64,000 nucleotides of DNA from Haliotis rubra. Taxonomy: Eukaryota. The notes beneath the pieces were generated by a model. It was not told the DNA's origin. It did no database searches and was given only the letters and a program-made list of their open reading frames with translations. Shown piece after piece: positions 1-63,160 of this stretch (positions within the stretch are counted from its first letter, which is position 1; each line of letters begins with the position of its first letter). Both the position numbers and the translations under genes were made by a program. Location: positions 2,604,001 to 2,668,000 of the forward strand of contig NW_025766336.1 of assembly GCF_003918875.1 (NCBI RefSeq), read 5' to 3'.

Positions 1-293
1 TTTTCAAAAGTCCATCGATATTAAATAACACAAAACGTAACATGATGAGTGAATATGGTTTTATGTCGTTTTTAAACATTATGCAGCAATATCACGGTGG
101 GGGACCAGAAAAGTACCCATGTCTGTAATCGCTCCCTGGCTGGCGCATTACCTACTAGGCCACCTAACCTGCCCACTTTAAACGTGCGAATAGCCGTTGT
201 AAAAATCTTTCACTTATATAGATTTAATAATACACATGTGATATAGAACCGTTAAGACACCTCTGTTCCCTACTCCTTTCCTGTTCTGGGGAA

Positions 294-530
294 CCCGTGA
301 AGATCCGGGTTAGAAGTGATCTTCAGTAACCCATGCTTATCGTAAGAGGCGACTAACAGGATCGGGTGGTCAGGCTCGCTGACTTGGTCGACACATGACA
401 TCATAATTCCGTAGATCGATGCTCATGCTGTTACTCACTGGGTTGTCCGGTCCAGACTCGATTATTTACAGACCGCGGCCATATAGCGGGAATATTGCTG
501 AATGCGGCGTAAAACTAAAGTCACTCACTC
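294..530 (+). mobile_element. Meta/MESC-domain SINE, family B (no tRNA head)
   Basis: Starts cccgtgaagatccgggttagaa; contains the Meta core tcgtaagaggcgactaa; 3' tail shared with family A. Confidence 0.88.
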
Positions 531-823
531 AATATAGTATAAATATAGGAGAGGAAAACTTGTCAGTGGAGATATAATATGAGATGGATAATCAACTAGG
601 GGATGCCGTTGACAACAAAGCAAACAGTTCTAACCACGATAACGACAGGCTGCTGGAAAATACCTTACTCAGCATGTAAGTTGTGCAGACCCAGCCATGT
701 AACATGATAACATGTTAAACGTTCATTCAGAGATATTGCGAGTATCAGGCTACACAACGGGATCAGAAACGTGTCGGGGCGTTTCAGCGAAACATTCTCC
801 TTACTACACAAATATCGTCTATT

Positions 824-1180: not shown

Positions 1181-1350
1181 TGAGTGAGTGAGTGAATTTG
1201 GTTTTACGCCGCTTTGAGCAATATTCCAGCAATATCACGGCGGGGGACACCAGAAATGAGCTTCACACAATGTACCCATGTGGGGATTCGAACCCGGGTC
1301 TTTGGCGTGACGAGCGAACGCTTTAACAACTAGGCTACCCCACCGCCCCC
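1181..1350 (-). mobile_element. tRNA-derived SINE, family A
   Basis: A box tagcctagtggt-like and B box ggttcgaatcc, tail gctggaatattgct..gcggcgtaaaac(actc)n, TSD caacagtacttgag. Confidence 0.92.
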
Positions 1351-1480
1351 AACAGTACTTGAGGTACTTGAGTCTGGGCATAACTTTGGTTCGTCTTATG
1401 AGCAACTGTACATGAAGACAGGGTTAATACGCCATCGATAACAACCAGAAAGCTTGACCTCGGTATTCTTACATTGCCTC

Positions 1481-1709
1481 CGGGTTAGAATCGGTCTTCA
1501 GTAACCCATGATAGTAGTATGAGGCGACAAACGGGATCGGGTGGTCAGGCTGGCTGACTTGGTTGACACAAGTCATCGGTTCCCGTTTGCGTAGACCGAT
1601 GCTCATACTGTTGATCACTGGATTTTCTAGTCCGGACTCGATTATTTACAGCCCGCCGCCATATAGCTGGAATATTGCTGAGTGCGGCGTTAAACAACAA
1701 ACCAACCAA
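1481..1709 (+). mobile_element. SINE family B, slightly 5'-truncated, inserted in an older opposite-strand Meta-SINE
   Basis: TSD tcttacattgcctc (1467-1480) / tcttacatcgcctc (1710-1723). Confidence 0.88.
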
Positions 1710-13602: not shown

Positions 13603-14679
13603 TTAGTTAGCCACCAGCAGGTGCTGCAGCTGGTTTGGGTAGGCCAGAGAAGAACCCAGACCCAGGCCGTCCATGAATGTCTTGTGGCCCTCGGGAGAGA
13701 TGGAATTCAGAGAAGCATTAGTAGAGAGAAGGTCAGGAAAGCCAGGACTGAGGGCCCCCGGGGAGAGATGGCTTGGGGAGTTGTGACGGTAGAGGTCTCC
13801 CAGGAAGGCCCCTGGAGACTGTTGGGTGAACTGGCTGGCCTGGATCAAGCGCTGCTGCTGGTCAAGGAGGAACTCAACCCGGGGGTCCCTGGGGGACAAG
13901 GATCGGGGACGTTGTGGGGCCGGTGGAGTGAAGCTCGGGGTCGTAGATCTCTGTCTGAAGAAGTTCCCAAACTCTGTTGGTGACAACCTTGTTGGCCTTT
14001 TCACGTGCGTCTTCAGCTTAGTGGAACCAAACTTGGTTTGTGCGAATGTGGCAGCTGTGAAACGGGGCTTGCTGCCTCCCTCCTTCTGGAGGAAATTTGG
14101 CGTCGGTGTGGGCGTCGGGACAGGGCTGGCTGAGTTGAAGAGAGCTGTGGAAGGAGACGTAGATGTGCTCCAGCCGCCTGAAGAGTTGGGAGAGGAGGGC
14201 GAAAGGCTGAGATTAGTGAGAGATGACGAGAGAGAGTCTATGGGTTTGAAACATTGTGCCTCGGGGTTGAACCCCTTGCTTGCAGCCTGTACCTCCCTAT
14301 CCACGATAGTCTCAGATTCCTCCTCTTTCTTGTCACTGTAGAGAATCTTGATGACCCCCTTCTCCCCGATCCTGTAGGATACCTCGGATGGGTCAATCCA
14401 AAGGGTCAGCTCCGCTGGAAGGTACCCCTTGACCTCTTCGATGTCCAGACCAGAGTTGAAAGCAGCCATGACGATGACAGGGTCAACCTTTTCTCCATTT
14501 ACACGGATGCATCGGTAGGCTGATCCCTTGAAGGGCTTATCCGGGTACCAGTGTCCCTCAAACTTCTTTTTGAGCCCCTTCTCGAGTTCCTCGGCAAACA
14601 TGTCGACCCGCCTTCGTGGGAGTTTGTTGTAAAGATACGAAATGACGAAGTTGAGTGCTACTGACGTTTCCACGTGCAT
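13603..14679 (-). CDS. Tob: Tob protein (BTG/Tob antiproliferative family; CAF1/CCR4-NOT adaptor), 358 aa, CDS in one exon
   Basis: N-terminus MHVETSVALNFVISYLYNKLPRRRV matches Tob1/2. Also BTG box A (HWYPDKPFKGSAYRCI), box B (LPAELTLWIDPSEVSYRIGE), PAM2 motif (FNPEAQCFKP), Tob-specific FTAATFAQTKFGSTKLK and C-terminal ..LLVAN. True start is the ATG at 14679 (context acgATG), not the GTG at 14688 used by the ORF track. Confidence 0.97.
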   Translation of the reverse strand: MHVETSVALNFVISYLYNKLPRRRVDMFAEELEKGLKKKFEGHWYPDKPFKGSAYRCIRVNGEKVDPVIVMAAFNSGLDIEEVKGYLPAELTLWIDPSEVSYRIGEKGVIKILYSDKKEEESETIVDREVQAASKGFNPEAQCFKPIDSLSSSLTNLSLSPSSPNSSGGWSTSTSPSTALFNSASPVPTPTPTPNFLQKEGGSKPRFTAATFAQTKFGSTKLKTHVKRPTRLSPTEFGNFFRQRSTTPSFTPPAPQRPRSLSPRDPRVEFLLDQQQRLIQASQFTQQSPGAFLGDLYRHNSPSHLSPGALSPGFPDLLSTNASLNSISPEGHKTFMDGLGLGSSLAYPNQLQHLLVAN

Positions 14680-23003: not shown

Positions 23004-24601
23004 TGTTAAGGATGTACAAATCTACTCTTGACACATTGTGCTCACAAGGCCACGGTTTCTTAAATGTCACATCTCCGGCAACAGCAGTGATTCTATGAAT
23101 ATTTCATCCAGATTGATATCACCGTATACAAATATTGTTTCCTAGTAATCCACCTGGTTCTCCTCATATTACGGGCGATGGAAATTACCACGTCAAAGTG
23201 AGCGAATGTTGTTTCACGTCAGTACTCCACCTACATCACGACGACCCGTCATGAAATCCTGGACTGAAGCTGTGAAGGAGCTCAATTACAAGCCGTGTCA
23301 ATACTTAAAACATGGATGGCGCTGGAAATAAAATTACTATACACCCATTGGCTTAGCATTCAACACAGCCTTGGAGCAAGGCTACTACCCGACCAGCCCT
23401 TTCTGTTATGCTACAGACCCATCTCACTGGGGCTCTTTTTCAGTTTAAAGGGAATGATTTGTTTCTATAAAAATATTATATATATTCATGGACTAAGCGT
23501 GAGTCTACCTTGCCGCCTCGCTAGCAAACNNNNNNNNNNNNNNNNNNNNNNNNNNNNNNNNNNNNNNNNNNNNNNNNNNNNNNNNNNNNNNNNNNNNNNN
23601 NNNNNNNNNNNNNNNNNNNNNNNNNNNNNNNNNNNNNNNNNNNNNNNNNNNNNNNNNNNNNNNNNNNNNNNNNNNNNNNNNNNNNNNNAGCATCATCTGA
23701 TGCATATGCCACAAAACAAACAAAAATGTATTCTTTTCAACTGCTCAAGTCTTCGGTTGGTCTGGCGAGAGGATAGTGACACGAGTCACACGGTTGTTGA
23801 CGTGACCGGGGGTACCAGGTGGCCATCTGTTACCATGGTAACGCCGTCGTAAAATAACAACAGCTTGCCCACACACCCTACAGCTACACATCACGCATGG
23901 GGAGATCAGGCAGGTTTTGTGAAGGAAAATTCAATTTTGTAGAGAAATGCGATCAGCTGTTCAAACGCAATGGACTTAAACAATGAGCCTGACTGCCAGT
24001 ATGTCAAATTCCCTCACAATAGTCAACTGCAACACCTTCCATGTCAGCTGTCGCTGTACGTAACCTACGCAACAGAAACCGCTGTCCTTTCGGTAACGAC
24101 TGCTCTCGTGTTTAATGGGAATATATGTTAGTCCTTCATCGACCCAAGTATAAACGAAACGCCCTGGTCGAAACTCCTTGTAACACTTAAAAAATATCAA
24201 GCACAATTTCTAACACATGCATATTAGTTTGCACTACATTATCGTCTTCATATTAGTTTAACCATTTTTTGTAGTGGGTGCGGGGTTGGGGCACCGGGTG
24301 GGGGGATGGTGCGTGCGTGCGTGCGTGCGTGTGTGTGAAGGGGCCGAAGTGGTGCAGGTCATAGACGTTCGACTTTCGCTCTCTGGAGCACAGTTTGAAC
24401 ATTATAGAAGAGGAGGAACGCCATTGACACAGTTAGATTGTCACCGTTATAGAACATGGCGGTATGTACTTTGGTTTTATGTCACATTCAGCATCAATAT
24501 AGGTACATCGATATGCGATCACTGGATTGTCTAGACCAGACCAGAAAATGTACAGACCGCCATATATCTGCAATATTGCTGAGTGAATCGTCAAACAATA
24601 G

Positions 24602-24772
24602 AGGGCGGTGGGGTAGCCTAGTGGTTAAAGCGTTGGCTCGTCACGCCGAAGACTTGGGTTTGATTCCCCACATGGGTACAATGTGTGAAGCCCATTTCTG
24701 GTGTCCCCTGCCTTGACGTTGCTGGAATATTGCTAAAAGCGGCGTAAAGCCAAACTCAGTCAGTCAGTCAGT
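24602..24772 (+). mobile_element. SINE family A inserted in a decayed family B tail
   Basis: TSD gtcaaacaata; B-like sequence at 24515-24590. Confidence 0.88.
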
Positions 24773-26614: not shown

Positions 26615-26858
26615 GACCCGTGAAGGTCCAAGTTAGAATTGATCTTCGGTAACCCATGATTGTCGTAAGAGGCGACTAACGGGATCGGGTGGTCAGGATC
26701 GCTGACTTTGTTGACACATATGTCATCGGTTCCCAATTGCGCAGATCGATGCTCATGCTGTTGATCACTGGATTGTTTGGTTCAGACTCGATTATTTACA
26801 GATATAGCTGGAATATTGCTGAGTGCGGCGTAAAACTAAACTCACTCACTCACTCACT
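26615..26858 (+). mobile_element. SINE family B, full length
   Basis: TSD gtgtattgccg (26604-26614 / 26860-26870) fixes the 5' end at gacccgtgaa. Confidence 0.9.
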
Positions 26859-27980: not shown

Positions 27981-28652
27981 TAGACTCACGCTTAGTCCCT
28001 GAATATATATAATATTTTTATAGAAACAAATCATTCCCTTTAAACTGAAAAAGAGCCCCAGTGAGATGGGGCTGTAGCATAACAGAAAGGGCTGGTCGGG
28101 GAGTATCCTTGCTCCAAGGCTGTGTTGAATGCTAAGCCAATGGGTGTATAGTAATTTTATCCTTTAAAGAGGTAAGTCTATTAGCGGACTGTACGGACGC
28201 CAGTTTGTTAGAGGAATATTTATATATTTTAGAATTTATCGTTTAAACTATTAATTATTACCTTAGAGACTCATGCAAGTCTAGGCGGGAGGGGAAAATG
28301 CGGTTCAATGAGTGAGTGAGTATAGTTTTACGCCGCATTCAGCAATATTCCAGCTACATGGCGGCGGTCTGTAAATAATCGAGTCTGGACCAAACAATCC
28401 AGTGATCAACATCATGAGCATCGATCTGCGCAATTGGGATACGATGACATGTGTCAACCAAGCCAGCGAGCCTGACCACCCGATCCCGTTAGTCGCCTCT
28501 TACGACAAGCATGGGTTACTGAAGGTTCATTCTAACCCGGACCTTCACGGGTCCGGCAATACACAAATAAACATTAAACTGTGTTCATTTATTTACGATT
28601 GTTATATTTCTTGTACGGGAATAATACGGGTCAGGGACTGTGAGGCAGACTA
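27981..28652. mobile_element. Academ-like element interrupted by a ~510-bp insert (~28104-28613)
   Basis: Starts tagactcacgcttagtccctgaat and ends gcagacta; both ends align to 36732-36930; decayed TSD gcggcaagg / caggcacgg (6 of 9 match). Confidence 0.6.
28309..28553 (-). mobile_element. SINE family B
   Basis: Full-length match to the family. Confidence 0.9.
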
Positions 28653-30427: not shown

Positions 30428-30599
30428 ATAATGGCGTGGGGTGGTATGACGCTGAACTATGAACGTCATACTGTCCACGGCAGAGTCACGAGTCAATACT
30501 ATTGGCATAACATCATTGCAACATCAGTGGTGCCTTTTGCAATATAGTGTTGTGCAACGTTTCATCTGTCAAGGTGATAATGCACATACCCATGCATGT

Positions 30600-31458
30600 C
30601 CCCCCGTGAACATTCGGGTTAGAATTGGTCTTCAGCAACCCATGCTTGTCTCCCCGTGAACATTCGGGTTAGAATTGGTCTTCAGCAACCCATGCTTGTC
30701 CCCCGTGAACATTCGGGTTAGAATTGGTCTTCAGCAACCAATGCTTGTCTCCCCGTGAACATTCGGGTTAGAATTAGTCTTCAGCAACCCATGCTTGTCC
30801 CCCCGTGAACATTCGGGTTAGAATTGGTCTTCAGCAACCCATGCTTGTCCCCGTGAACATTCGGGTTAGAATTGGTCTTCAGCAACCCATGCTTGTCCCC
30901 CGTGAACATCCGGGTTAGAGTTGGTCTTCAGCAACCAATGCTTGTCCCCCGTGAACATCCGGGTTAGAATTGGTCTTCAGCAACCCATGCTTGTCCCCCG
31001 TGAACATTCGGGTTAGAATTGGTCTTCAGCAACCCATGCTTGTCCCCGTGAACATTCGGGTTAGAATTGGTCTTCAGCAACCCATGCTTGTCTCCCCGTG
31101 AACATTCGGGTTAGAATTAGTCTTCAGCAACCAATGCTTGTCTCCCCGTGAACATTCGGGTTAGAATTGGTCTTCAGCAACCCATGCTTGTCCCCCGTGA
31201 ACATTCGGGTTAGAATTAGTCTTCAGCAACCCATGCTTGTCCCCCCGTGAACATTCGGGTAGAATTGGTCTTCAGCAACCCATGCTTGTCCCCCGTGAAC
31301 ATTCGGGTTAGAATTGGTCTTCAGCAACCCATGCTTGTCTCCCCGTGAACAATCGGGTTAGAATTGGTCTTCAGCAACCCATGCTTGTCCCCCCGTGAAC
31401 AATCGGGTTAGAATTGGTCTTCAGCAACCCATGCTTGTCGTAAGAGGCGACTAACGGG
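30600..31458 (+). repeat. ~49-bp satellite, ~17 copies, derived from the 5' end of SINE family B
   Basis: Unit (c)nccgtgaacattcgggttagaattggtcttcagcaacccatgcttgt; the last unit runs on into cgtaagaggcgactaacggg. Confidence 0.95.
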
Positions 31459-31604
31459 TATTTGAGTTTGGGCTAAACAATGGTTCATATTATGAGCAAC
31501 TGTACATGATGACATGCACCATCAGTAAGAACCAGATTGCTTGACCTCGATGTTTTTACATTGCCTCCGGGTTAGAATCGATCTTCAGTAACCCATGCCT
31601 GTCT

Positions 31605-31853
31605 CCCCGTGAAGACCAGAGTTGGAACTTGTCTTCAGTAACCCATGCTTGTCGTATGAGGCGACTAACGGGATCGGGTGGCTAGGCTTGCTGACTTGGT
31701 CGACATATGTCATCGTATCCCAGTTGCGAAGATCGATGCTCATGCTGTTGATCACTGGGTTGTCTGGCTTAGACTCGATTATTTACAGACCGCCGCCATA
31801 TAGCTGGAATATTGCTGAGTGCGGCGTTAAACAACAACCAACCAACCAACCAA
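31605..31853 (+). mobile_element. SINE family B
   Basis: Full-length match with (caac)n tail. Another copy at 33160-33370 and a 3' fragment at 36205-36335. Confidence 0.88.
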
Positions 31854-39885: not shown

Positions 39886-40069
39886 GACCAGACAGTCCAG
39901 TGATCAACAGCATGAGCATCGATCTGCGCAATTGGGAACCGATGACATGTGTCAACCAAGTTAGCGAGCCTGACCACCCGATCCCGTTAGTCGCCTCTTA
40001 CGACAAGCATAGTCGCCTTTTGTGGCAAGCATGGGTTGCTGAAGACCTATTCTACCCCGGATCTTCACG
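39886..40069 (-). mobile_element. SINE family B, subfamily with duplicated Meta hairpin
   Basis: Contains gttagtcgcctcttacgacaagcatagtcgccttttgtggcaagcatggg; same variant at 51762-51988 and 56256-56503. Confidence 0.88.
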
Positions 40070-40102
40070 TTTCCAAAACAGCGTTAGAAACACATTTAGG
40101 TA

Positions 40103-41630
40103 TACTGAGTCAAAAAGACTTCACATTCTTTCTTCAGGGCACTATAAAAGAACAAGAGATGGTAAGATGGTTAAATTGTTATTATTTCATTGCTGAGATC
40201 TGTGTGATGTACTCGATACACTGACAGTGCCATAATCAGTTCCATTAGGCTACACCGCCGTTCCAAAACATCGGTATACAGAATGTCAAGTCACAAGAAT
40301 CAAAATGCGAAATGTCTCAGTTCAATATCGTGTATGGCCGCCCCGCGCATTCACCACTGCCAAACACCGTCTCCTCATCGACTGCCTGATGCTTGTGAAC
40401 ACGTGGTTGGGGATTCTGCGCCATTGCTCTTGCAAGGCAGCGCCAAGTTCCTGCAAATTCTGAGGTTGGTTCCTAAGACCACGAAGCCTCCTCCCAAGTG
40501 CATCCCAAACGTGCTCTATTGGATTAAGGTCAGGGGACCTCGATGGCCAGTCCATGACGTTGATTCCAGCGTTTTGAAGGAAATTTCGTGTCAACATCGC
40601 GGTATGCGGCCGAGCATTATCATGCTGGAACTGTAGACCTGGGCCATGAGCCGCCATGAAAGGAAGGAGTTCAGGGGTGAGCACCTGGTCGCGGTAAGCA
40701 GCAGCTGTGAGGTCTCCACGGATGACCAGAAGTCGGGAACGGTTGTTCCCACAGAAAGCACCACACACCATGCAACTTCCGCCCCCGAATCTGTCGACTT
40801 CCTGTACACAACATTGGGCATACCGTTCACGACGTCATCTCCAGACTCTATGCCTGCCGTCCGCGAATCTGAGGGTAAACCTGGATTCATCGCTAAAGAC
40901 GACTCGATTCCAGTCTCTCTGGGTCCATCGGAGGTGACGTTGGGCCCACAGCAGACGTTGACGTTGATGAAACGGCGTCAATATTGGCCCACGATATGGA
41001 CGTCGAGAATGGAGATTGGCAGCCCGCAACCGATTTCGAATGGTCTGTGAGGACAGTCGACCTCTAAACATCTCAGCCCTGGTTCGTGTAGCCGGCAGAA
41101 ATCTGTCACGTAGGTGACGTAGGACGATTTGACGGTCTTCTGCTCGTGACGTCACACGTGGACGACCCGACCTTGGGCGATCAGAAGTGGTGCCAGTTTG
41201 TTGTAGACGACCTCGCAAGTCATACACAGTACGACGGCTGCATCCCATTGCTCTTGCGACGTCAATAACTGATCTTCCCGCTTGCAACATGCCAACGGCA
41301 CGTTCACGTTGCACATTTGACAATCGTGGCATTTCAAGTACCGTTAGAACTGTGGTTTAAAAGTGTTTTTTAAATCCTTGAGGCCAATGCAAACACGTGC
41401 ATATGAAGAAAACTTCGATGCGAAGATCACGTGATCGACTGCACGTGCAAAACCTGATTTGGCACTAACGTCATTTGTACGACGAATGGATGGGTTTGAG
41501 TGGGTTTTGCTAACGTTTTTCTAGAGTCGAAAGATAGGGATCCCATTTCGGATACATAGATGTATCATCAGAGAAAAATTATTCATTATTTTTCAAATTA
41601 CATTTTGTGAAGTTTCTTTTTTGACTCAGT
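40103..41630 (-). mobile_element. Tc1/mariner (DD34E) transposon, nearly full length
   Basis: TIRs tactgagtcaaaaagacttcaca (40103-40125) and tgtgaagtttcttttttgactcagt (41606-41630), TA flanks, internal transposase. Confidence 0.95.
40322..41332 (-). pseudogene. Tc1 transposase, 336 codons, with one in-frame TGA at 40835-40837
   Basis: The two track ORFs are one frame (..HRVWR*RRERYAQCCVQEVDRFGGGSCMV..). HTH N-terminus, GRPR linker, FSDESRF / FQHDNARPH / SPDLNPIE with 34 residues between the second D and the E. Confidence 0.93.
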
Positions 41631-42164: not shown

Positions 42165-42391
42165 TTCGTTTGTTGTTTAACGCCACCCACAGCTATATGG
42201 CGGCGGTCTGTACATATTCGAGTCTGGACTAGACAATCCAGTGACCAGCAACATGAGTATCGATCTACGCTGCTGGGATACAATTACATGTGTCAACCAA
42301 GTCAGCAAGCTTGACTACCTTATCCAGTTACTCGCCTCTTACGACAAGCAAGGGTTGTTGAATACCAATTCTAACCCGGATCTTGGCGGGT

Positions 42392-42437
<46 letters not shown>

Positions 42438-42676
42438 GAAGGCCCGGGTTAGAAGTGATCTTCGGTAACCCATGCTTGTCGTAAGAGGTGACTAATGGGA
42501 TCGGGTGGTCAGACTCGCTGACTTGGTTGACACATGTCATCGGTTCCCAATTGCGCAGATCGATGCTCATGCTGTTGATTACTGGATTGTCTGGTCCTGA
42601 CCCAATTATTTACAGACCACCACCATATAGCTGGAATATTGCTGAGTGCGGCGTAAAACTAAACTCACTCACTCAC
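42165..42676. mobile_element. Head-to-head pair of family B SINEs (42165-42385 -; 42436-42676 +) around (TAC)n
   Basis: Both match the family; (tac)n at 42392-42437 and again after the second copy. Confidence 0.88.
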
Positions 42677-45363: not shown

Positions 45364-46559
45364 TTACTTTTTACAGTCATATGTTTGCAAGAACGAGTGA
45401 TCGTTAAGTAGACACAATCAAATAACAGTTCTTTTAATTTCCAACTGCATAAAAATACCAAACGACATATTTTGTTCCCCCGTCAGATAATAAAACATTA
45501 AATTATAATGATTGTGAACATGCTGTTAAATCCATTTAGGGGGAATACGAAGTACATATATAGTTCATTGGAAGCTTCGAAACCTCATTTTGAACACGCT
45601 TTGAATCACAACGCTAATTTAACAACCGTCAAATACCTACCATTAGAAAACTTGTGTACTTACTTGGGAGTTAAACTAACGAAGCTGTTAGGGTTCGGGG
45701 TATTTAGCGTAATACAACAAACCCTGCATACTCGAGGATGATGCCCAGAAATTTACTTTGACTAACACTCACAATCTTGATCCTATAAGCTTATGAAAAA
45801 TATACATTCATTTGAAAGGACATGTTCGTTTTGTACATGCAATACTTGCTGACTGGTATCATTATATCTTCATTTGTGAAACATGTGTAACCTATCGCTC
45901 GCAATATATCCATCCTCTGGCGCGGATGACACCCGTGAATATCCGGGTTAGAATTGATATTCAGTAAACCATGCTCGTCGTAAGAGGTGGCCTTAACTCA
46001 CAATGAGTTTACCGGATCAGTTTAAAAACCGAAAACGAAATGAAATCACAATAGTATCTCGACGAGATGACCACGAAACAGTCCACCATATTCAAGGATA
46101 TAAATCATTTCACACAACCGGGAGATGTTTCCGCTGTTATCACAACATGAATGAAAACCTGGTAACTGTGATTCATTAAAACACAAAATGGCCAACGTGA
46201 ATTTATTCTGGGACATAACTGCCCAATTATGGCCCTTCTCCTCTCAGTCCTGACCAAACAAGTCTGAAGGCCTGGAAATAGAAGAAATCAATGAAAGATA
46301 CGTTTATTGCTCTGGAAAGTGTCTCTCTCTGAGACAGATTCCAGCAAACTCGATATTTGGAACCTTTCCCTGTCAAACTAAAAACCCTAGTTGACTTGAA
46401 TTTCAGGGTTGATACTCGTAGCAACAAGTGTTACTGTTTGGCTCGCCCTGTTGCTTAGTTCCATATCGTGTCTAAACGTGTTCATGGTGGTAGGCATGAC
46501 GGAGGTTCCTCTTCAGTTACTCCAATAACAGCGGCGTTAAACGAACGAACGAACGCACG

Positions 46560-46613
<54 letters not shown>

Positions 46614-46929
46614 CACACACATACTGTTGCAATCGTGCATTGAGAGTCGCCCTACACGCTGTGAGTGAATTATCAGAGGGTGTTAGCGCTGCTTTAAGCA
46701 ATTTGTCAGAACAGTATGTGTCGGGTTACTAGATACAGCAGGGAAATACAAAGTGCCATGGCAGGTTGACCGATATTGTTCAATCAGCCTGTAGGACAAC
46801 TACGAACATTTATTGTGATCAAGTCAAACTTAATAGACGCAAGCCAATTTTAATACGCTTATAAACAAACCCCATATATTTCAGAAAGAGATGTGTTTGC
46901 TTACATGTCCCCCTAAAACTGTTGGCAAA

Positions 46930-47881
46930 TTTTGAAAGCAATCTTATCAGATGTAGTATATTTGAAAGTGTTCTTGCCGAATGTAGTATATTTGAAAGCA
47001 GTCTTGCCGGATGTAGTATATTTGAAAGCAATCTTGCCGGATGTAGAATATTTGAAGGCAATCTTGCCGGATGTAGAATATTTGAAAGCAATCTTGCCGG
47101 ATGTAGTATATTTGAAAGCAATCTTGCCGGATGTAGAATATTTGAAGGCAATCTTGCCGGATGTAGAATATTTGAAAGCAATCTTGCCGGATGTAGTATA
47201 TTTGAAAGCAATCTTGCCGGATGTAAAATATTTAAAAGCAATCTTGACGGATGTAGTACATTTGAAAGCAATCTTGACGGATGTAGAATATTTAAAAGCA
47301 ATCTTGCCGGTTGTATTTTTGAAAACAATCTTGACGGATGTAGTACATTTGAAAGCAATCTTGACGGATGTAGAATATTTGAAAGCAATCTTGCCGGTTG
47401 TATATTTGAAAACAATATTGACGGATGTAGTATATTTGAAAGCAATCTTGACGGATGTAGAATATTTGAAAGCAATCTTGCCGGTTGTATTTTTGAAAAC
47501 AATCTTGACGGATGTAGTATATTTGAAAGCAATCTTGACGGATGTAGAATATTTAAAAGCAATCTTGCCGGTTGTATATTTGAAAACAATATTGACGGAT
47601 GTAGTATATTTGAAAGCAATCTTGACGGATGTAGAATATTTAAAAGCAATCTTGACGGATGTAGAATATTTGAAAGCAATCTTGCCGGTTGTATATTTGA
47701 AAACAATATTGACGGATGTAGTATATTTGAAAACAATCTTGACGGATGTAGAATATTTAAAAGCAATCTTGCCGGATGTAGAATATTTGAAAGCAATCTT
47801 GCCGGATGTATATTTGAAAACAATATTGACGGATGTAGTACATTTGAAAGCAATCTTGACGGATGTAGTATATTTGAAAAC
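46930..47881. repeat. 30/27-bp minisatellite, ~32 units
   Basis: Unit gatgtagtatatttgaaagcaatcttg(c/a)cg, with periodic 27-bp variants. Confidence 0.95.
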
Positions 47882-48922
47882 AGTGAGTGTAACATCCATC
47901 CCCCTTCCCCAACAGACAGGCAGGCAGACACGCACGCACGCACGCACGCACGCACACACACGCTTACGTCATAAAATGTAGACGCTTTCACATGCACATA
48001 TAGCATAGTACAAATGCTAGCATACCAGCTTCAATTCAATGGTGATTAATAGCTACTTGACCACTATGTAAGAGCCACTGACTTCGTTCGGCCTTGGTTA
48101 CAGTCAGTTACCCCTTTACGTCTATTGTAGAAAATACATACATGGTGTGATTTACATAGACAAGTCATTTCGTATAAATACATTCACGTATACTAATTGT
48201 GTGGGGAAAAATCTCGTTTTAGAATGTTATTGCAAATTTCACAAGGACACCATCGAGCGTCCGTCAAACGTAACCCGAGAATGCTGGTTGCAGTGACGTC
48301 GGTAATTCTGCTTTTAATATCCTACTTGTATATTGTGAAAGACATATGTCTCGATTTGTAACTAGAAGCCACTGTGGAGACAGAAATTGCACCGAAGAAA
48401 GACACAGCGACTATAGATACACACATGACATGGAAAAGAAGAAACATGTAAAACAAACGATTGACTAATATTAGAACCGTGATAGAACAACCTATTCAAA
48501 GACATTGATGAGTAAGTTAAATTACGTTCAGAGCATTAAACTTTGTCTAGGAGTCGTATGACTTTTCCTTTTTTGAAGGAAAAGTACAAAATATCAGTCT
48601 AAAAGGGGTGATTATATTCCATCATAATAATGATGAATGGTTTCTTGTTTTTCTACAGTTTTGAGAAGTATAGAACAGTAATACATAGAATATGAAATAC
48701 GAGTTAATAATTACGTTCGTGTGACAAAGACGTCATTGCAACTATTGTGTTATCATATATCAATTAATCAGTTATGTTTGCATTACGTAAACAGCGGTTT
48801 CCGGCGTGTGGACTAATTTTTTAATGCACCTGTGCTTCTTATGCAGTTTTAACGCTTATCGTGGAACATATGGATATTTGTTTCATCATACTCAAAATTA
48901 AATCGTTGATTCATTACGCCAA

Positions 48923-51761: not shown

Positions 51762-51988
51762 AGTGAGTGAGTTTAGTTTTACGCCGGCAGTCTAATCGAG
51801 TCTGAACCAGACAGTCCAGTGATCAACAGCATGAGCATCGATCTGCGTAATTGGGAACCGATGACATTTGTCAACCAAGTCAGCGAGCCTGACCACCCGA
51901 TCCCGTTAGTCGCCTCTTACGACAAGCATAGTCGCCTTTTGTGGCAAGCATGGGTTGCTGAAGACCTATTCTACCCCGGATCTTCACG
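51762..51988 (-). mobile_element. SINE family B, duplicated-hairpin subfamily
   Basis: Same variant as 39886-40069. Confidence 0.88.
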
Positions 51989-51993
51989 TTTCC

Positions 51994-53945: not shown

Positions 53946-54262
53946 TTTAACGAGAGAGGTAAAGCATAAAATATCGACTCTGGACCAGACAATTCAGTGA
54001 CTGACGTCATGAACATCGATCTAAAAATTAGGCTACGATGACAAGCATCAACAAAGTCAGCAAGCCTGACCACCCGATCCCGCTAGTAGCTTCTTACGCC
54101 AAGCATTCTGCAGATCAGTTCTAACCAGGAACTTTACTTGTCTACCAACGAGAGATACGTTATGTAAATGACACTGTTGATTTGGCATATAGATTGGGTG
54201 CTCTTCCCGTTATTAGGAACGTTCTTCTTGTGTTGCACATGGTGTGTGGAGAAAGTACAATG

Positions 54263-56255: not shown

Positions 56256-56503
56256 AGTGAGTGAGTGAGTTTATTTTTACGCCGCAATCAGCAATATGCC
56301 AACTATATGGCGGCGGACTGTAAACAATCCAGAGATCAACAGCATGAGCATCGATCTGCGTATTTGGGAACCGATGACATGTGTCAACCAAGTCAGCGAG
56401 CCTGACCACCCGATCCCGTTAGTCGCCTCTTACGACAAGCATAGTCGCCTTTTGTGGCAAGCATGGGTTGCTGAAGACCTATTCTACCCCGGATCTTCAC
56501 GGG
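56256..56503 (-). mobile_element. SINE family B, duplicated-hairpin subfamily
   Basis: Flanked by gaaatagagt on both sides (TSD). More B copies or fragments at 45932-45990, 53975-54135, 57457-57647, 61620-61750, 62580-62820 and 63493-63615. Confidence 0.88.
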
Positions 56504-57880
56504 CCTTAGAAATAGAGTTTGTTTATAGTTGTGATAACAACAACATAACAAAAACATAAAAACTGAGTTTCTGATTTTAAAATATAACCTTGCATTCAAA
56601 AAAGGGCAGTTTTGTACTTATATCCTGGTTAATGTGCCTACGGCTGTCTTGTACAGAATGCAGGTTGATGGAACAGTCAGGCACCTCGAGTGTCAAGCCA
56701 AGGGGTGGGGTGAGCGTTGTCGCTTTAGGCGCCAACAGTACATGATATCTTGCACATAAAACAGATTGATTCCGCTGTGCATTGTAGAAAAGTCATGCAG
56801 AGAAAATAGAAATTAGCAGCAATAGCTTTGTTTGAGGTGGACGGCATTTGCTGAAGGAATGAATTTTTTCAGAGAACATCCACTGTTCAGTCGCAGCGCG
56901 CCACAAGGAGGAAATAGCGTTCAGGCCGTTAACAGCTGATTGAACACACGGGGAAGTGGAGAAATTTTACAAATACACCAAAAAGACAAACATTTGTAAA
57001 GTTTTGTTCCAAATATGGTATGGACACGCGTTTCTCGTGTTAGCCCCAAGATTCTGCCCCTTCGATGTCAGTTATCGGTGGGCCCCCTGCTCGGTGTTAT
57101 GCAGGTGAACAAAACACACAGCACCCTAACCCCACTTTTGAAAATATACTGAGAGAAACAAATAAAGGAATACGGGAAAATTCAAGTGTTCCTTTCATAT
57201 ATTCCAGTTTTCATCACCAGCTTTGAATAGCGGTGTGGAAGGAAATATGAGAATAAATAAAGGAACACTGCAATGAATAAACCCCTTACTCCATCAAAGA
57301 CACACTTCTTNNNNNNNNNNNNNNNNNNNNNNNNNNNNNNNNNNNNNNNNNNNNNNNNNNNNNNNNNNNNNNNNNNNNNNNNNNNNNNNNNNNNNNNNNN
57401 NNNNNNNNNNNNNNNNNNNNNNNNNNNNNNNNNNNNNNNNNNNNNNNNNNNNNNNNTCTGTAAATAATCAAGTCTGGACCCGACAATCCAGCAGTGATTA
57501 AAATCATGCGCATCGTTCTACGCAATTGGGATACGACGACGACGTGTGTCAACCAAGTCAACGACCCTGACCACCCGATCCCATTAGTCGTCTCTTACGA
57601 CAAGCATGGGTTACTGAAGATCAATGCTAACCCGGATCTTCATGGGTCCAGTTTCTCGAAGCGATCTTAGCACTATGTATGTCGTAAGGTACATCATGGA
57701 GGATACGTCAGAAGCGGAGATGCAAAATCAGTCATTAAAATCAGGGTTTCGTTTCACACAAGCTTTTTTCTATCAACGTGATCATATCAATATATTAAAG
57801 GAACAATCGTAAGGCCTAAAGTGGCTTAGTGAATACGTTCCCTGCATTATCATATCTCTATTGCAATCTCGTTGCAATAA

Positions 57881-61877: not shown

Positions 61878-63160
61878 TTATGTACAAAGTAAGTGACTCC
61901 TGGATGTCATATACAAAATCAGTTCCCCCACCTCTTCCCATTTTTTAAGAATAATAGTTTAATACTCTTTACATTCACCACCCCCACAAAAAAGTAATAA
62001 ATTAAAAAAAATATGTGCAAAGTAAGTGTCCCCCTCTGCATGTCATACACAAAGTCAATGACCCCCACTCCTTTCCCATACTTCTTATGAAGAACAAAAT
62101 GGCTGACCCCAACCCCTTAAAATCATCATCAACACACACCCTCCCCTCCCAAAAATGTATGTGCAAGGTAAGTGACGCCCCCACCAACCCCCACCTCCCC
62201 GCATGCCATATACCAAATCAATGACCTCCACCCCCATTCTTCCCTTTTTTTAAGAATAATAATTTAATACGTTTATTTCCAAAGTGCTGACACCCAAAGT
62301 GCATGTTACAATATTGATGTAACACCATAATCACGCCTCCACATTACTCATTGCATATAACGGTAATCTCACATGAAACCTGCACACCACGTCCACCATC
62401 TTCAATCCCCGCCACTTACCTATTCACCATAAGCCTTATTGCTTCCTGTTAAAATACACCATCCATTTCACAATAGAACACACTGTTATTTGAAGCACAA
62501 ATGGGAAAGAGAATGGGATTTAAGGTAACACAGGGGATAGGATTAACCTTCGTAGATATCTATCGTTGATAGACAAGAGAAGTTCCTGGTTAGAACTGAT
62601 CTTCTGTAACCTGTGATTGGCGTAAGAGGCGACTAACGGGATCGGGTGGTCAGGTTGGCTGACTTGGTTGATGCATGTCATCGTATTCCAATTGCGTGGA
62701 TGCTCATGGCGTCAATCACTCGCTTGTCTGGTCCAGAGTCGATTATTTACAGACCCAGTCGTGTAGCTGAAATATATTGCTGAGTGCGGTGTTAAACAGC
62801 AAACTCAGACCAAACCTGCAAACAGACCGTAAGAATACGTCCCCACCGAGTCATGCTAGTTGTGACGACGTATTAGATGTGATGGTAAGGCTGTTAGACA
62901 TATTTGGTTGGCTGCATGTATTCGTTGTAACGCGGCAGTGTGCACGTTTTACATTATTTGTATGAATCACTTAATGGTTTACAACGTGCAGAATCGATCT
63001 CCAGACAGTAGTCGTAATAGTTGGAATAATGCTGTCCTCCTCTGCATGTCATACACAAAGTCAATGACCCCCACTCATTTCCCATACTTCTTATGAAGAA
63101 CAAAATGGCTGACCCCAACCCCTTAAAATCATCATCAACACACTCCCTCCCCTCCCCAAA
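61878..63160. repeat. Degenerate ~140-bp tandem repeat (3 units, 61878-62270) plus a displaced copy (63033-63160)
   Basis: tatgtgcaaagtaagtg..atgtcata..aa..tca recurs; 62027-62152 is nearly identical to 63033-63160. Confidence 0.75.

What the first reader, a model, noticed from the sequence alone, without database searches (positions are those of the whole stretch)
294..360. 5' module of the head-less SINE B folds into a covarying four-way junction with a kissing loop: candidate ribozyme or other functional RNA
Seen: the consensus cccgt-gaagatc-cgggttagaatt-gatcttc-agca-accca-tgct-t-gtcgt-aagag-gcgac-ta-acggg gives P1 (cccgt/acggg) enclosing P2 (gaagatc/gatcttc), P3 (agca/tgct) and P4 (gtcgt/gcgac). 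The P2 loop (gggt) is complementary to the P3 loop (accc). Copies vary while keeping pairing. P2 is gaaTatc/gatAttc at 45932, gaaggt/accttc at 28553 (minus), gaaggtc/gatcttc at 26617 and gaagac/gtcttc at 31605. The 5' side of P3 alternates agca/agta/ggta (wobbles). Known: gtcgtaagaggcgactaa is the core of the Meta/MESC SINE domain, which is widespread in metazoans and, to my knowledge, has no established function. Inference: the domain is a selected RNA tertiary structure. By eye it does not fit hammerhead, HDV, twister or pistol consensus; its loop-loop architecture recalls the SRP Alu domain.
Basis: partly seen in the sequence, partly recalled or inferred. Interest (0 to 1): 0.78.

Follow-up and report, generated by a model that had tools for sequence, protein, structure and literature searches.

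The report
Folded RNA head of abalone SINE
The 67 bases are the start of a very abundant abalone jumping element of a type described in 2016 (a SINE headed by a non-tRNA, reportedly LINE-derived module); its predicted four-stem RNA fold is also kept in an oyster relative, but nothing supports a self-cutting RNA.

Summary
The sequence facts are right. Window 294-360 is the first 67 nt of an abalone (Haliotis rubra) SINE with at least 15 headed copies in the window. About 147,000 contigs of one DNA run match it, and the family's 5' end is sharp at 292/293.

The family consensus folds into P1-P4 as its minimum-energy structure, but single copies are not unusually stable. Only P2 covaries (4 of 7 pairs, P about 0.005). 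P1, P3, P4 and the kissing loop show no covariation.

New here: an Ostrea edulis SINE has the same head. Homology covers only bases 1-72 and the tail. The 8 consensus differences break no pair (P about 0.01).

The element matches the "LP-SINEs" of Matetovici et al. 2016, which carry a non-tRNA head. I could not confirm the Meta/MESC label, and the tRNA head that defines that family is absent.

No Rfam family matches. Two pairs of copies carry shared upstream sequence, which argues against efficient 5' self-cleavage.

Best reading: a conserved structured 5' RNA domain of LP-type SINEs, function untested. The scan reached a similar reading on other DNA of this genome (s1-347361).

The parts
293..360 (+). 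Head module of this SINE copy. The family's 5' end is at 292/293. P1 294-298 with 356-360, P2 299-305 with 318-324 (12-nt loop 306-317 holding CGGGTTAGAA), P3 325-328 with 334-337, P4 339-343 with 349-353. This copy has private changes at 316, 339 and 358 that weaken P4 and P1.
   Evidence: (loose ends at 292/293; 316 G>T, 339 A>G and 358 A>G are the family letters)
294..531 (+). The whole SINE copy: head, about 120-nt body, and a tail ending in ACTAAA plus (TCAC)n. The tail is shared with the tRNA-derived SINE at 24600-24770.
26617..26683 (+). Head copy (P2 with a G.U pair). The element is flanked by the 11-nt target duplication GTGTATTGCCG.
28485..28551 (-). Head copy with a compensated P2 pair (A-U to G-C). 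It shares 62 nt of upstream sequence with copy 26617.
31606..31672 (+). Head copy with a compensated P2 pair (U-A to C-G), preceded by a partial head unit.
45932..45991 (+). Head copy cut off inside P4, with a compensated P2 pair (G-C to U-A).
57580..57646 (-). Best-scoring head copy. P1 is CCCAT/ATGGG; both changes are CpG transitions.
42324..42390 (-). Head copy, head-to-head with copy 42433-42499 across a (TAC)n microsatellite.
42433..42499 (+). Head copy inserted in (TAC)n. Its P1 5' strand is replaced.
62574..62640 (+). Older, diverged head copy. P1 5' strand is CAAGA and P2 has a U.U mismatch. It shares about 16 nt of upstream sequence with 54079-54140 (minus).
56415..56503 (-). Head of a subfamily with a 22-nt duplication of the P4 region. 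Sister copies lie at 39983-40071 and 51902-51990 (minus); those two share 36 nt of upstream sequence and have P1 5' strand AACGT.
   Evidence: (loose end at 333 in runs X21 and X22)
30588..31458 (+). Tandem array of 17.3 units of 49-50 bp (higher-order period 197). Each unit is P1 5' strand + P2 + P3 + GTC. The last unit runs on through P4 and the P1 3' strand, then the sequence becomes unrelated.
   Evidence: the same joint (338 back to 294, with GTCT between) stands in 11 contigs of DNA run X1 and 2 contigs of X21
1467..1535 (+). Variant in which the P1 and P2 5' strands are replaced by an unrelated region of about 130 nt. That region recurs at 31459-31560. The four-way junction cannot form here.

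Best explanation
Window 294-360 is the 67-nt head of an LP-type SINE, a short retrotransposon whose 5' end is not a tRNA. Matetovici et al. 2016 report this head to be borrowed from the 5' end of LINEs. The element is head, then an unrelated body, then a LINE-type tail, and the partner LINE's machinery copies it.

Shown here:
- The head is a discrete module whose limits coincide with helix P1.
- An oyster SINE shares it at 85% identity while the bodies are unrelated.
- All 8 consensus differences between abalone and oyster keep the nested P1-P4 pairing.
- P2 shows repeated compensatory changes.
- The 12-nt P2 loop (CGGGTTAGAAT) is the best-conserved piece.

Inferred: the head acts as a folded 5'-terminal RNA domain that active source copies must keep. 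Most likely it is recognised by the partner LINE's proteins, or it protects or defines the RNA's 5' end. It may also overlap an internal promoter. It is not a self-cleaving ribozyme. The loop-loop contact is possible (three G-C pairs in both taxa) but unproven.
For: Family and limits:
- 41 model matches in the window and loci, 18 of them full-length heads at E below 1e-10.
- 147,050 contigs of DNA run X1 lie on the element, with loose ends at 292/293 whose upstream consensus is unconserved.
- Target duplications and a tail of ACTAAA plus (TCAC)n.

No small-RNA head:
- ARAGORN finds no tRNA and Rfam finds nothing at any copy.

Shared module:
- Ostrea edulis locus L016 has 3 full heads and 1 partial one.
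- Abalone and oyster are homologous only over bases 1-72 (84.7%) and the tail.
- A Littorina element flanked by a target duplication, with AATAAA before its (AAAG)n tail, shares CGGGTTAG, a hairpin and the 21-nt P4 region, then diverges.
- These features fit the text of PMC4758252: about 70 bp of head homology, a shared Haliotis/Ostrea tail, and the hexamers AATATA and ACTAAA.

Fold:
- The consensus minimum-energy structure is P1-P4.
- P2 has 4 of 7 pairs with double changes, P 0.004-0.007.
- Tool count: 6 pairs with double change against 2.5 in shuffles, reached by 6 of 500 shuffles.
- Abalone against oyster consensus: 8 substitutions, 0 broken pairs, P=0.011.
Against: - P1, P3 and P4 show no covariation. 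P3 and P4 hardly vary, and P1 is broken in many copies.
- Folding energies are ordinary, z from -2.8 to +0.4.
- RNAalifold does not recover P1 or P3.
- The Littorina head lacks the P2 5' strand, and window copy 1467 lacks the P1 and P2 5' strands, so the junction is not universal.
- The sample is small: 16 copies from two taxa, the copies are related to each other, and the abalone-oyster test is a single comparison.
- Compensation in a hairpin can also arise at the DNA level by template switching between the arms.
- I could not see any LINE that starts with this head; there is no reverse-transcriptase ORF in the window or loci. The LINE origin therefore rests on the 2016 paper.
- No function was tested.
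Confidence: 0.55

Rival explanations
1. The head is a self-cleaving ribozyme that frees the element's RNA from read-through transcripts by cutting just 5' of P1. HDV-like ribozymes do this at the start of R2, RTE and L1Tc LINEs.
For: The family's 5' end is sharp and sits 0-1 nt before P1. There is no recognisable Pol III head. PMC4758252 itself points to the L1Tc Pr77 precedent. In the 40069/51988 pair, which kept a 36-nt leader, P1 is damaged (AACGT).
Against: No match to any Rfam ribozyme family at E up to 10 on three copies or on the whole window. The helix order (P1 enclosing three hairpins) is not the HDV nested double pseudoknot. Copy 28551 kept a 62-nt leader with P1-P4 intact. A sharp 5' end is equally given by an internal promoter that starts at +1. 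The Littorina head lacks P2.
Confidence: 0.05
2. The conserved part is a DNA-level promoter: a vestigial tRNA T-arm with a B box (GGTTAGAAT against GGTTCGAAT) that recruits TFIIIC. The fold is incidental, and the GGG/CCC 'kissing' pair is the old T stem split by a 13-nt insert.
For: GAAGATCCGGGTTAGA matches the variable-loop and T-arm segment of the co-resident tRNA-derived SINE heads at 14 of 16 positions, P 0.0016-0.004 against shuffles. The mapping to tRNA positions comes from the Rfam alignment. This loop is the most conserved piece of the head and is identical in oyster. The abalone consensus has no T4 run.
Against: The Rfam tRNA model and ARAGORN do not see the head. There is no A box, and the motif lies at +14 to +24, too close to the 5' end for a type-2 promoter that starts at +1. 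The oyster and Littorina relatives carry 1 and 5 internal T4-T5 runs, and Littorina has AATAAA before its tail, which speaks for Pol II (PMC4758252). A promoter does not explain the compensatory changes in P2 or the pair-preserving abalone-oyster differences.
Confidence: 0.15
3. There is no RNA function. The complementary segments are short and GC-rich. P2 is a DNA inverted repeat whose arms are kept alike by template switching during replication. The head is conserved only because it was recently exchanged or because it is a promoter.
For: Covariation is confined to the one long inverted repeat. Each compensated variant is below 5% of the family, since no such variant is listed. Folding z-scores are ordinary. 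The head readily forms DNA-level tandem arrays and partial duplications.
Against: Abalone and oyster consensus heads differ at 8 sites with none breaking a pair in P1-P4, including wobble-preserving changes in P1 and P2 that arm-to-arm copying would not produce. The module's limits coincide with P1.
Confidence: 0.2
4. The four-way junction is a tRNA-like cloverleaf, with P1 as acceptor, P2 as D arm, P3 as anticodon arm and P4 as T arm. RNase P trims upstream-initiated transcripts at the base of P1.
For: The order and rough sizes of the four helices are those of a cloverleaf, and the 5' end lies at the first paired base.
Against: ARAGORN and the Rfam tRNA model find nothing. The loops have the wrong sizes, 5 nt where tRNA has 7. 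A leader is retained in copy 28551 with an intact fold.
Confidence: 0.05

Closest known systems
[quoted passage not shown] 2016, PMC4758252: Lsa_2, Hdi_LP/Hmi_LP, Oco/Oed_LP, Sgl_LP)
   Same: No tRNA head. A head module of about 70 nt is shared between Haliotis, Ostrea and Littorina while the bodies differ. Haliotis and Ostrea share the tail. Target duplications, 3' tandem repeats and polyA-signal-like hexamers (ACTAAA, AATATA; AATAAA in Littorina) are present.
   Different: The paper, in the text I could read, treats the head as a candidate promoter and describes no fold. Here the head is shown to be a four-helix domain with P2 covariation and pair-preserving divergence. I could not compare with the published consensus sequences (the figures are not held) or with any LINE.
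MetaSINE / MESC SINE superfamily (Nishihara et al. 2016, PMC4824008; Matetovici et al. 2016)
   Same: A short piece (GTCGTAAGAGGCGACTAACGG) is identical across distant molluscs, as in a highly conserved SINE domain. The tails are LINE-type tails ending in short tandem repeats; Meta SINE tails are reported to resemble those of Nimb LINEs (PMC11481361), which I could not test for this element. Scallop MESC SINEs are reported to carry the LP segment at their 5' end.
   Different: All MetaSINEs begin with a tRNA-derived promoter followed directly by the domain, and here there is none. Here the conserved piece lies inside the head and homology stops at base 72. Haliotis MESC SINEs are reported to end in (CACCT)n and to hold a (CA)n repeat, unlike this family.
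HDV-like ribozymes and the Pr77 element at the 5' ends of LINEs (R2, RTE, L1Tc)
   Same: A conserved structured module at the very 5' end of a retrotransposon RNA, shared between otherwise unrelated elements.
   Different: No Rfam match. A different helix topology. Copies with retained leaders.
R2 5' RNA element that binds the R2 protein (established knowledge: Christensen, Ye and Eickbush 2006)
   Same: A folded 5' RNA of a non-LTR element. This is the function I think most likely by analogy.
   Different: No sequence or fold relation was tested. This is purely an analogy.
tRNA T arm / B box, and the SRP Alu domain
   Same: A 14 of 16 match to the T-arm segment of local tRNA-SINE heads. Two hairpins with G-rich and C-rich loops closed by a stem recall the Alu domain.
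   Different: Neither the tRNA model nor the SRP model of Rfam scores the head.

Membership tests
LP-SINE (Matetovici 2016) | The 5' end is not derived from tRNA, 5S or 7SL RNA | tested here: met
   ARAGORN finds 0 tRNAs. Rfam finds nothing at any head copy at gathering score or at E up to 10.
LP-SINE (Matetovici 2016) | A head of about 70 nt is shared among mollusc families, with homology confined to the head (and, for Haliotis and Ostrea, the tail) | tested here: met
   Abalone consensus against the Ostrea edulis element: bases 1-72 at 84.7%, tail at 65%, bodies unrelated. The Littorina element shares only head motifs.
LP-SINE (Matetovici 2016) | Variable target duplications, 3' short tandem repeats, and a polyA-signal-like hexamer before them | tested here: met
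   Target duplications GTGTATTGCCG (copy 26617) and ACTCTATTTC (copy 56503). ACTAAA before (TCAC)n. Littorina: a 15-nt duplication and AATAAA before (AAAG)n.
LP-SINE (Matetovici 2016) | The head is homologous to the first ~70 nt of the 5' UTR of Nimb/I or RTE LINEs | not testable with these tools
   No LINE sequence could be reached. There is no reverse-transcriptase ORF in the window or loci. The Repbase entries and the paper's figures are not held.
MetaSINE / MESC SINE | A tRNA-derived promoter (A and B boxes) directly followed by the central domain | tested here: not met
   The 15 copies listed that hold the motif all lack a tRNA head, and nearly all start at or near the head module. The family's upstream sequence is unconserved.
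MetaSINE / MESC SINE | The central 66-100 bp matches the published Meta/MESC consensus | not testable with these tools
   The consensus is only in figures and supplements that are not held.
Known self-cleaving ribozyme classes (hammerhead, HDV-like, twister, twister-sister, pistol, hatchet, hairpin, VS, Hovlinc) | A match to the class covariance model | tested here: not met
   No such match at E up to 10 on windows of 161-221 nt around three copies or on the whole window.
Known self-cleaving ribozyme classes | Self-cleavage of a transcript | not testable with these tools
   This needs a bench assay. Indirect evidence: copies with retained 36- and 62-nt leaders.
tRNA-derived head / tRNA-like structure | Recognised by tRNA models; A and B boxes at standard positions | tested here: not met
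   Searches find nothing. Only a T-arm-like 14 of 16 match, P about 0.002-0.004.
SRP Alu domain | A match to the SRP RNA models | tested here: not met
   No SRP family among the Rfam matches.

The most novel reading that the evidence does not exclude
The 67-nt head is an autonomous, portable RNA domain: a four-way junction with a T-loop-like invariant loop and a possible loop-loop contact. It is exchanged between LINEs and SINEs across molluscs and, per the 2016 paper, insects and vertebrates. It would have a specific molecular job in retrotransposition, such as binding the LINE protein for second-strand steps, blocking 5' exonucleases, or an unclassified catalytic activity.
Probability: 0.3. 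Interest if true: 0.75.

Novelty: new member of a known kind. Interest (0 to 1): 0.45.

Why it matters
Why unrelated SINEs and LINEs keep the same short conserved modules over hundreds of millions of years is an open question. The 2016 papers state that the function is unknown and call for experiments. Here one such module has limits that coincide with a closing helix, one clearly covarying stem, and abalone-oyster differences that all preserve pairing. That shifts the likely level of action from DNA (promoter) towards RNA. It also gives a small, concrete object of 67 nt, with natural compensatory variants, for structure probing and retrotransposition assays. The element type itself is not new, and the evidence for the full four-way junction and the kissing loop is still thin.

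Tried and rejected
- Rfam at gathering and at E-value thresholds on the window, three abalone copies, one oyster copy and the Littorina element: nothing at the head. The only recurring hit is a weak antisense one to an insect flavivirus xrRNA model, 12-13 bits against a gathering score of 50, on the wrong strand.
- ARAGORN on the window and 7 loci: no tRNA.
- Exact-pattern scans of viral, metagenome and prokaryote genome collections. These gave chance hits in viral contigs and one abalone-like metagenome contig (L009, 3 copies); the other three scans gave nothing.
- Getting more mollusc DNA through orthologues of the window's Tob/BTG gene and a Tc1 transposase. Heads were found only in Ostrea edulis, Littorina saxatilis and Haliotis asinina. 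None were found in Mercenaria, Sinanodonta, Argopecten, Babylonia or two unnamed ENA assemblies.
- My first idea, that the head is the 3' half of a tRNA-derived MetaSINE head, rested partly on a tRNA-Thr sequence recalled from memory. I could not find that sequence in any paper and dropped it. Only the tool-based 14 of 16 match to local SINE heads is kept, as a rival.
- The apparent 630-nt 'long element' starting at 45932 has no other copy and is probably a truncated head plus unrelated DNA.
- Looking for a LINE with this head: no reverse-transcriptase ORF or motif in the window or loci.
- RNA runs were available only as contigs, so transcript ends could not be read.
- Paper supplements with consensus sequences are not held.

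Full report
WHAT IS THERE

The motif GTCGTAAGAGGCGACTAA occurs 14 times in the window with up to 3 mismatches, against 0.04 expected. BLAST and a covariance model find 15 interspersed copies that carry the 5' module, plus a tandem array of it. The genome is the blacklip abalone assembly (record QXJH01000023.1).

Laying contigs of public runs on 230-560 put 147,050 contigs of one DNA run on the element. Loose ends pile up at 292/293 and the upstream consensus is unconserved (agreement 0.35). The family is therefore huge and starts sharply 0-1 nt before P1.

Full copies are about 240 nt. They have target duplications, for example GTGTATTGCCG around copy 26617. They end in ACTAAA plus (TCAC)n, or in (CAAC)n. 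The tail is shared with a tRNA-derived SINE of the window at 24600-24770.

THE FOLD

The family consensus folds into exactly P1-P4 as its minimum-energy structure, at -19.1 to -21.1 kcal/mol. It does so both alone and as the first domain of the 243-nt element.

Individual copies are not unusually stable, with z-scores from -2.8 to +0.4. In the AGUA variant a nested helix GGGUU/AACCC, the same bases as the proposed kissing contact, takes 55% of the ensemble.

COVARIATION IN THE WINDOW ALONE

The tool count on 16 copies gives 84% paired cells. The covariation score is reached by 71 of 500 shuffles. Five pairs show double changes against 2.2 expected.

A neutral simulation that uses each copy's own divergence gives 3 compensations in P2 against 0.53 expected (P=0.017). 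P1, P3 and P4 show nothing beyond expectation: one P1 double change (P=0.27) and none in P3 or P4. RNAalifold on all 16 rows predicts nothing. On 10 clean rows it predicts only P2 and P4, with a covariation term of +0.46. The loop-loop pairs only break and never compensate.

The words 'covarying four-way junction with a kissing loop' therefore overstate what the window shows.

WHAT THE ELEMENT IS

Both papers state that those SINEs start with a tRNA-derived promoter directly followed by the domain. No copy here has one. ARAGORN and Rfam see nothing tRNA-like at any head.

Fetching mollusc loci around orthologues of the window's Tob/BTG gene gave an Ostrea edulis locus (L016) with three full heads and one partial head of the same design. 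The abalone consensus and the oyster element are homologous only over bases 1-72 (84.7%) and over the tail. The bodies are unrelated.

A Littorina saxatilis locus (L013) holds an element of about 390 nt. It is flanked by a 15-nt target duplication and has AATAAA before an (AAAG)n tail. It shares CGGGTTAG, a hairpin and the identical 21-nt P4 region, and then diverges.

This is what Matetovici et al. 2016 describe in words for LP-SINEs: Lsa_2, Hdi/Hmi_LP and Oco/Oed_LP. They report head homology restricted to about 70 bp, a shared Haliotis/Ostrea tail, a canonical polyA signal in Lsa_2, and the hexamers AATATA and ACTAAA.

I therefore file the element as an LP-type SINE. The claim that the head comes from LINE 5' UTRs rests on that paper. 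I could reach no LINE.

COVARIATION WITH OYSTER ADDED

On the model-fitted alignment of 16 full heads, 6 pairs show double changes against 2.5 in shuffles, a value reached by 6 of 500 shuffles. The covariation score is 0.171 against 0.139, also reached by 6 of 500. Slid controls give 0-3 pairs. Two of the P1 'doubles' are artefacts of a one-base misalignment of the oyster rows.

After correcting that, P2 has 4 of 7 pairs and 5 cells with compensation (P 0.004-0.007). P1 has one, a CpG-type double change (P=0.63). P3 and P4 have none, because they hardly vary. The truncated copy at 45932 adds a fifth P2 pair.

Independently, the abalone and oyster consensus heads differ at 8 positions. One is a compensated pair, three are wobble-preserving stem changes and three lie in loops. 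None breaks any of the 21 pairs. Random placement breaks 3.1 pairs on average, and P(0 broken)=0.011. This is the best evidence that the nested fold as a whole is constrained, but it is one comparison.

The kissing contact keeps three possible G-C pairs in both taxa and loses its U-A pair in oyster. It is neither supported nor excluded.

The P2 loop CGGGTTAGAAT is identical in abalone and oyster and is the most conserved part of the head.

RIBOZYME

No ribozyme or other Rfam family matches at E up to 10. The helix order is not that of HDV-like ribozymes.

Copy 28551 shares 62 nt of upstream sequence with copy 26617, which has its own target duplication. Copies 40069 and 51988 share 36 nt. These look like copies made from transcripts that began upstream and kept their leader, in one case with P1-P4 intact. 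That argues against efficient 5' self-cleavage. It does not exclude a weak activity.

PROMOTER

GAAGATCCGGGTTAGA matches the variable-loop and T-arm (B-box) segment of the local tRNA-SINE heads at 14 of 16 positions, P 0.0016-0.004. The abalone consensus has no T4 run.

Against this, the motif sits at +14 to +24 with no A box. The oyster and Littorina relatives carry 1 and 5 internal T4-T5 runs, and the Littorina element also has a polyA signal. A DNA promoter also does not explain pair-preserving change. I keep this reading as a rival at 0.15.

LIMITS OF THE FOLD

The Littorina head lacks the P2 5' strand. Window copy 1467 and the unit at 31546 replace the P1 and P2 5' strands by an unrelated 130-nt region. 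The 62574/54079 pair has a damaged P1. The junction is therefore a feature of the abalone/oyster type of head, not of every relative.

VERDICT

The element type has been known since 2016. Its fold is not in the text I could read, and this scan already noted it on other DNA of this genome.

Noticed in passing
window 30588-31458: A 17-unit tandem array of a 49-50-bp unit made of the first 48 nt of the SINE head (higher-order period 197, 95% identity). The same head-to-head joint occurs in 11 contigs of an abalone DNA run and 2 contigs of another organism's run, so a head-derived satellite is recurrent. Full-length head-to-tail dimers (joints 530/531 back to 293) are also seen.
   Followed up: partly
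L016 20811-21330 (Ostrea edulis): The oyster element here is a partial dimer: a head plus about 110 nt, then a second head that starts inside the P2 3' strand. The abalone copy at 31546-31606 has the same kind of partial head duplication. Template jumping near the head seems common in both taxa.
   Followed up: no
window 1339-1478 and 31459-31560: An unassigned repeat of about 130 nt (starting GGTAYTTGAGTYTGGGC) is joined to the SINE just before CCGGGTTAGAAT in two places, replacing the first 11 nt of the head. It is another 'jigsaw' head variant.
   Followed up: partly
window 39983-40071, 51902-51990, 56415-56503 (minus): A subfamily with a 22-nt duplication of the P4 region, which would make a fifth hairpin. 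Loose ends at 333 suggest it is the dominant form in two other organisms' runs (X21, X22).
   Followed up: partly
window 13603-14679 (minus): A single-exon Tob1/BTG-family gene (358 aa), 98% identical to Haliotis asinina Tob1-like. It served as the anchor to fetch orthologous loci.
   Followed up: yes
window 40283-41332 (minus): A frameshifted Tc1/mariner transposase (HTH_Tnp_Tc3_2 and related domains), with close relatives in many mollusc and fish assemblies.
   Followed up: partly
window 46819-48006: A minisatellite that reads open in four frames (repeat LSNILHPSRL...). It is not a gene.
   Followed up: yes
window 28453-28542 and 57548-57637 (+ strand, antisense to the SINE): A weak match to the insect-specific flavivirus xrRNA model (12-13 bits, gathering score 50) recurs on the strand opposite to the element. 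It is probably chance carried by the repeat.
   Followed up: no
L013 6551-6566 and 6948-6962 (Littorina): The target duplication of the Littorina element (AAGCTTCAGCAAACC) resembles the CTTCAGCAACCC stretch of the abalone head at 11 of 12 positions. This is either coincidence or an insertion into an older related copy.
   Followed up: no
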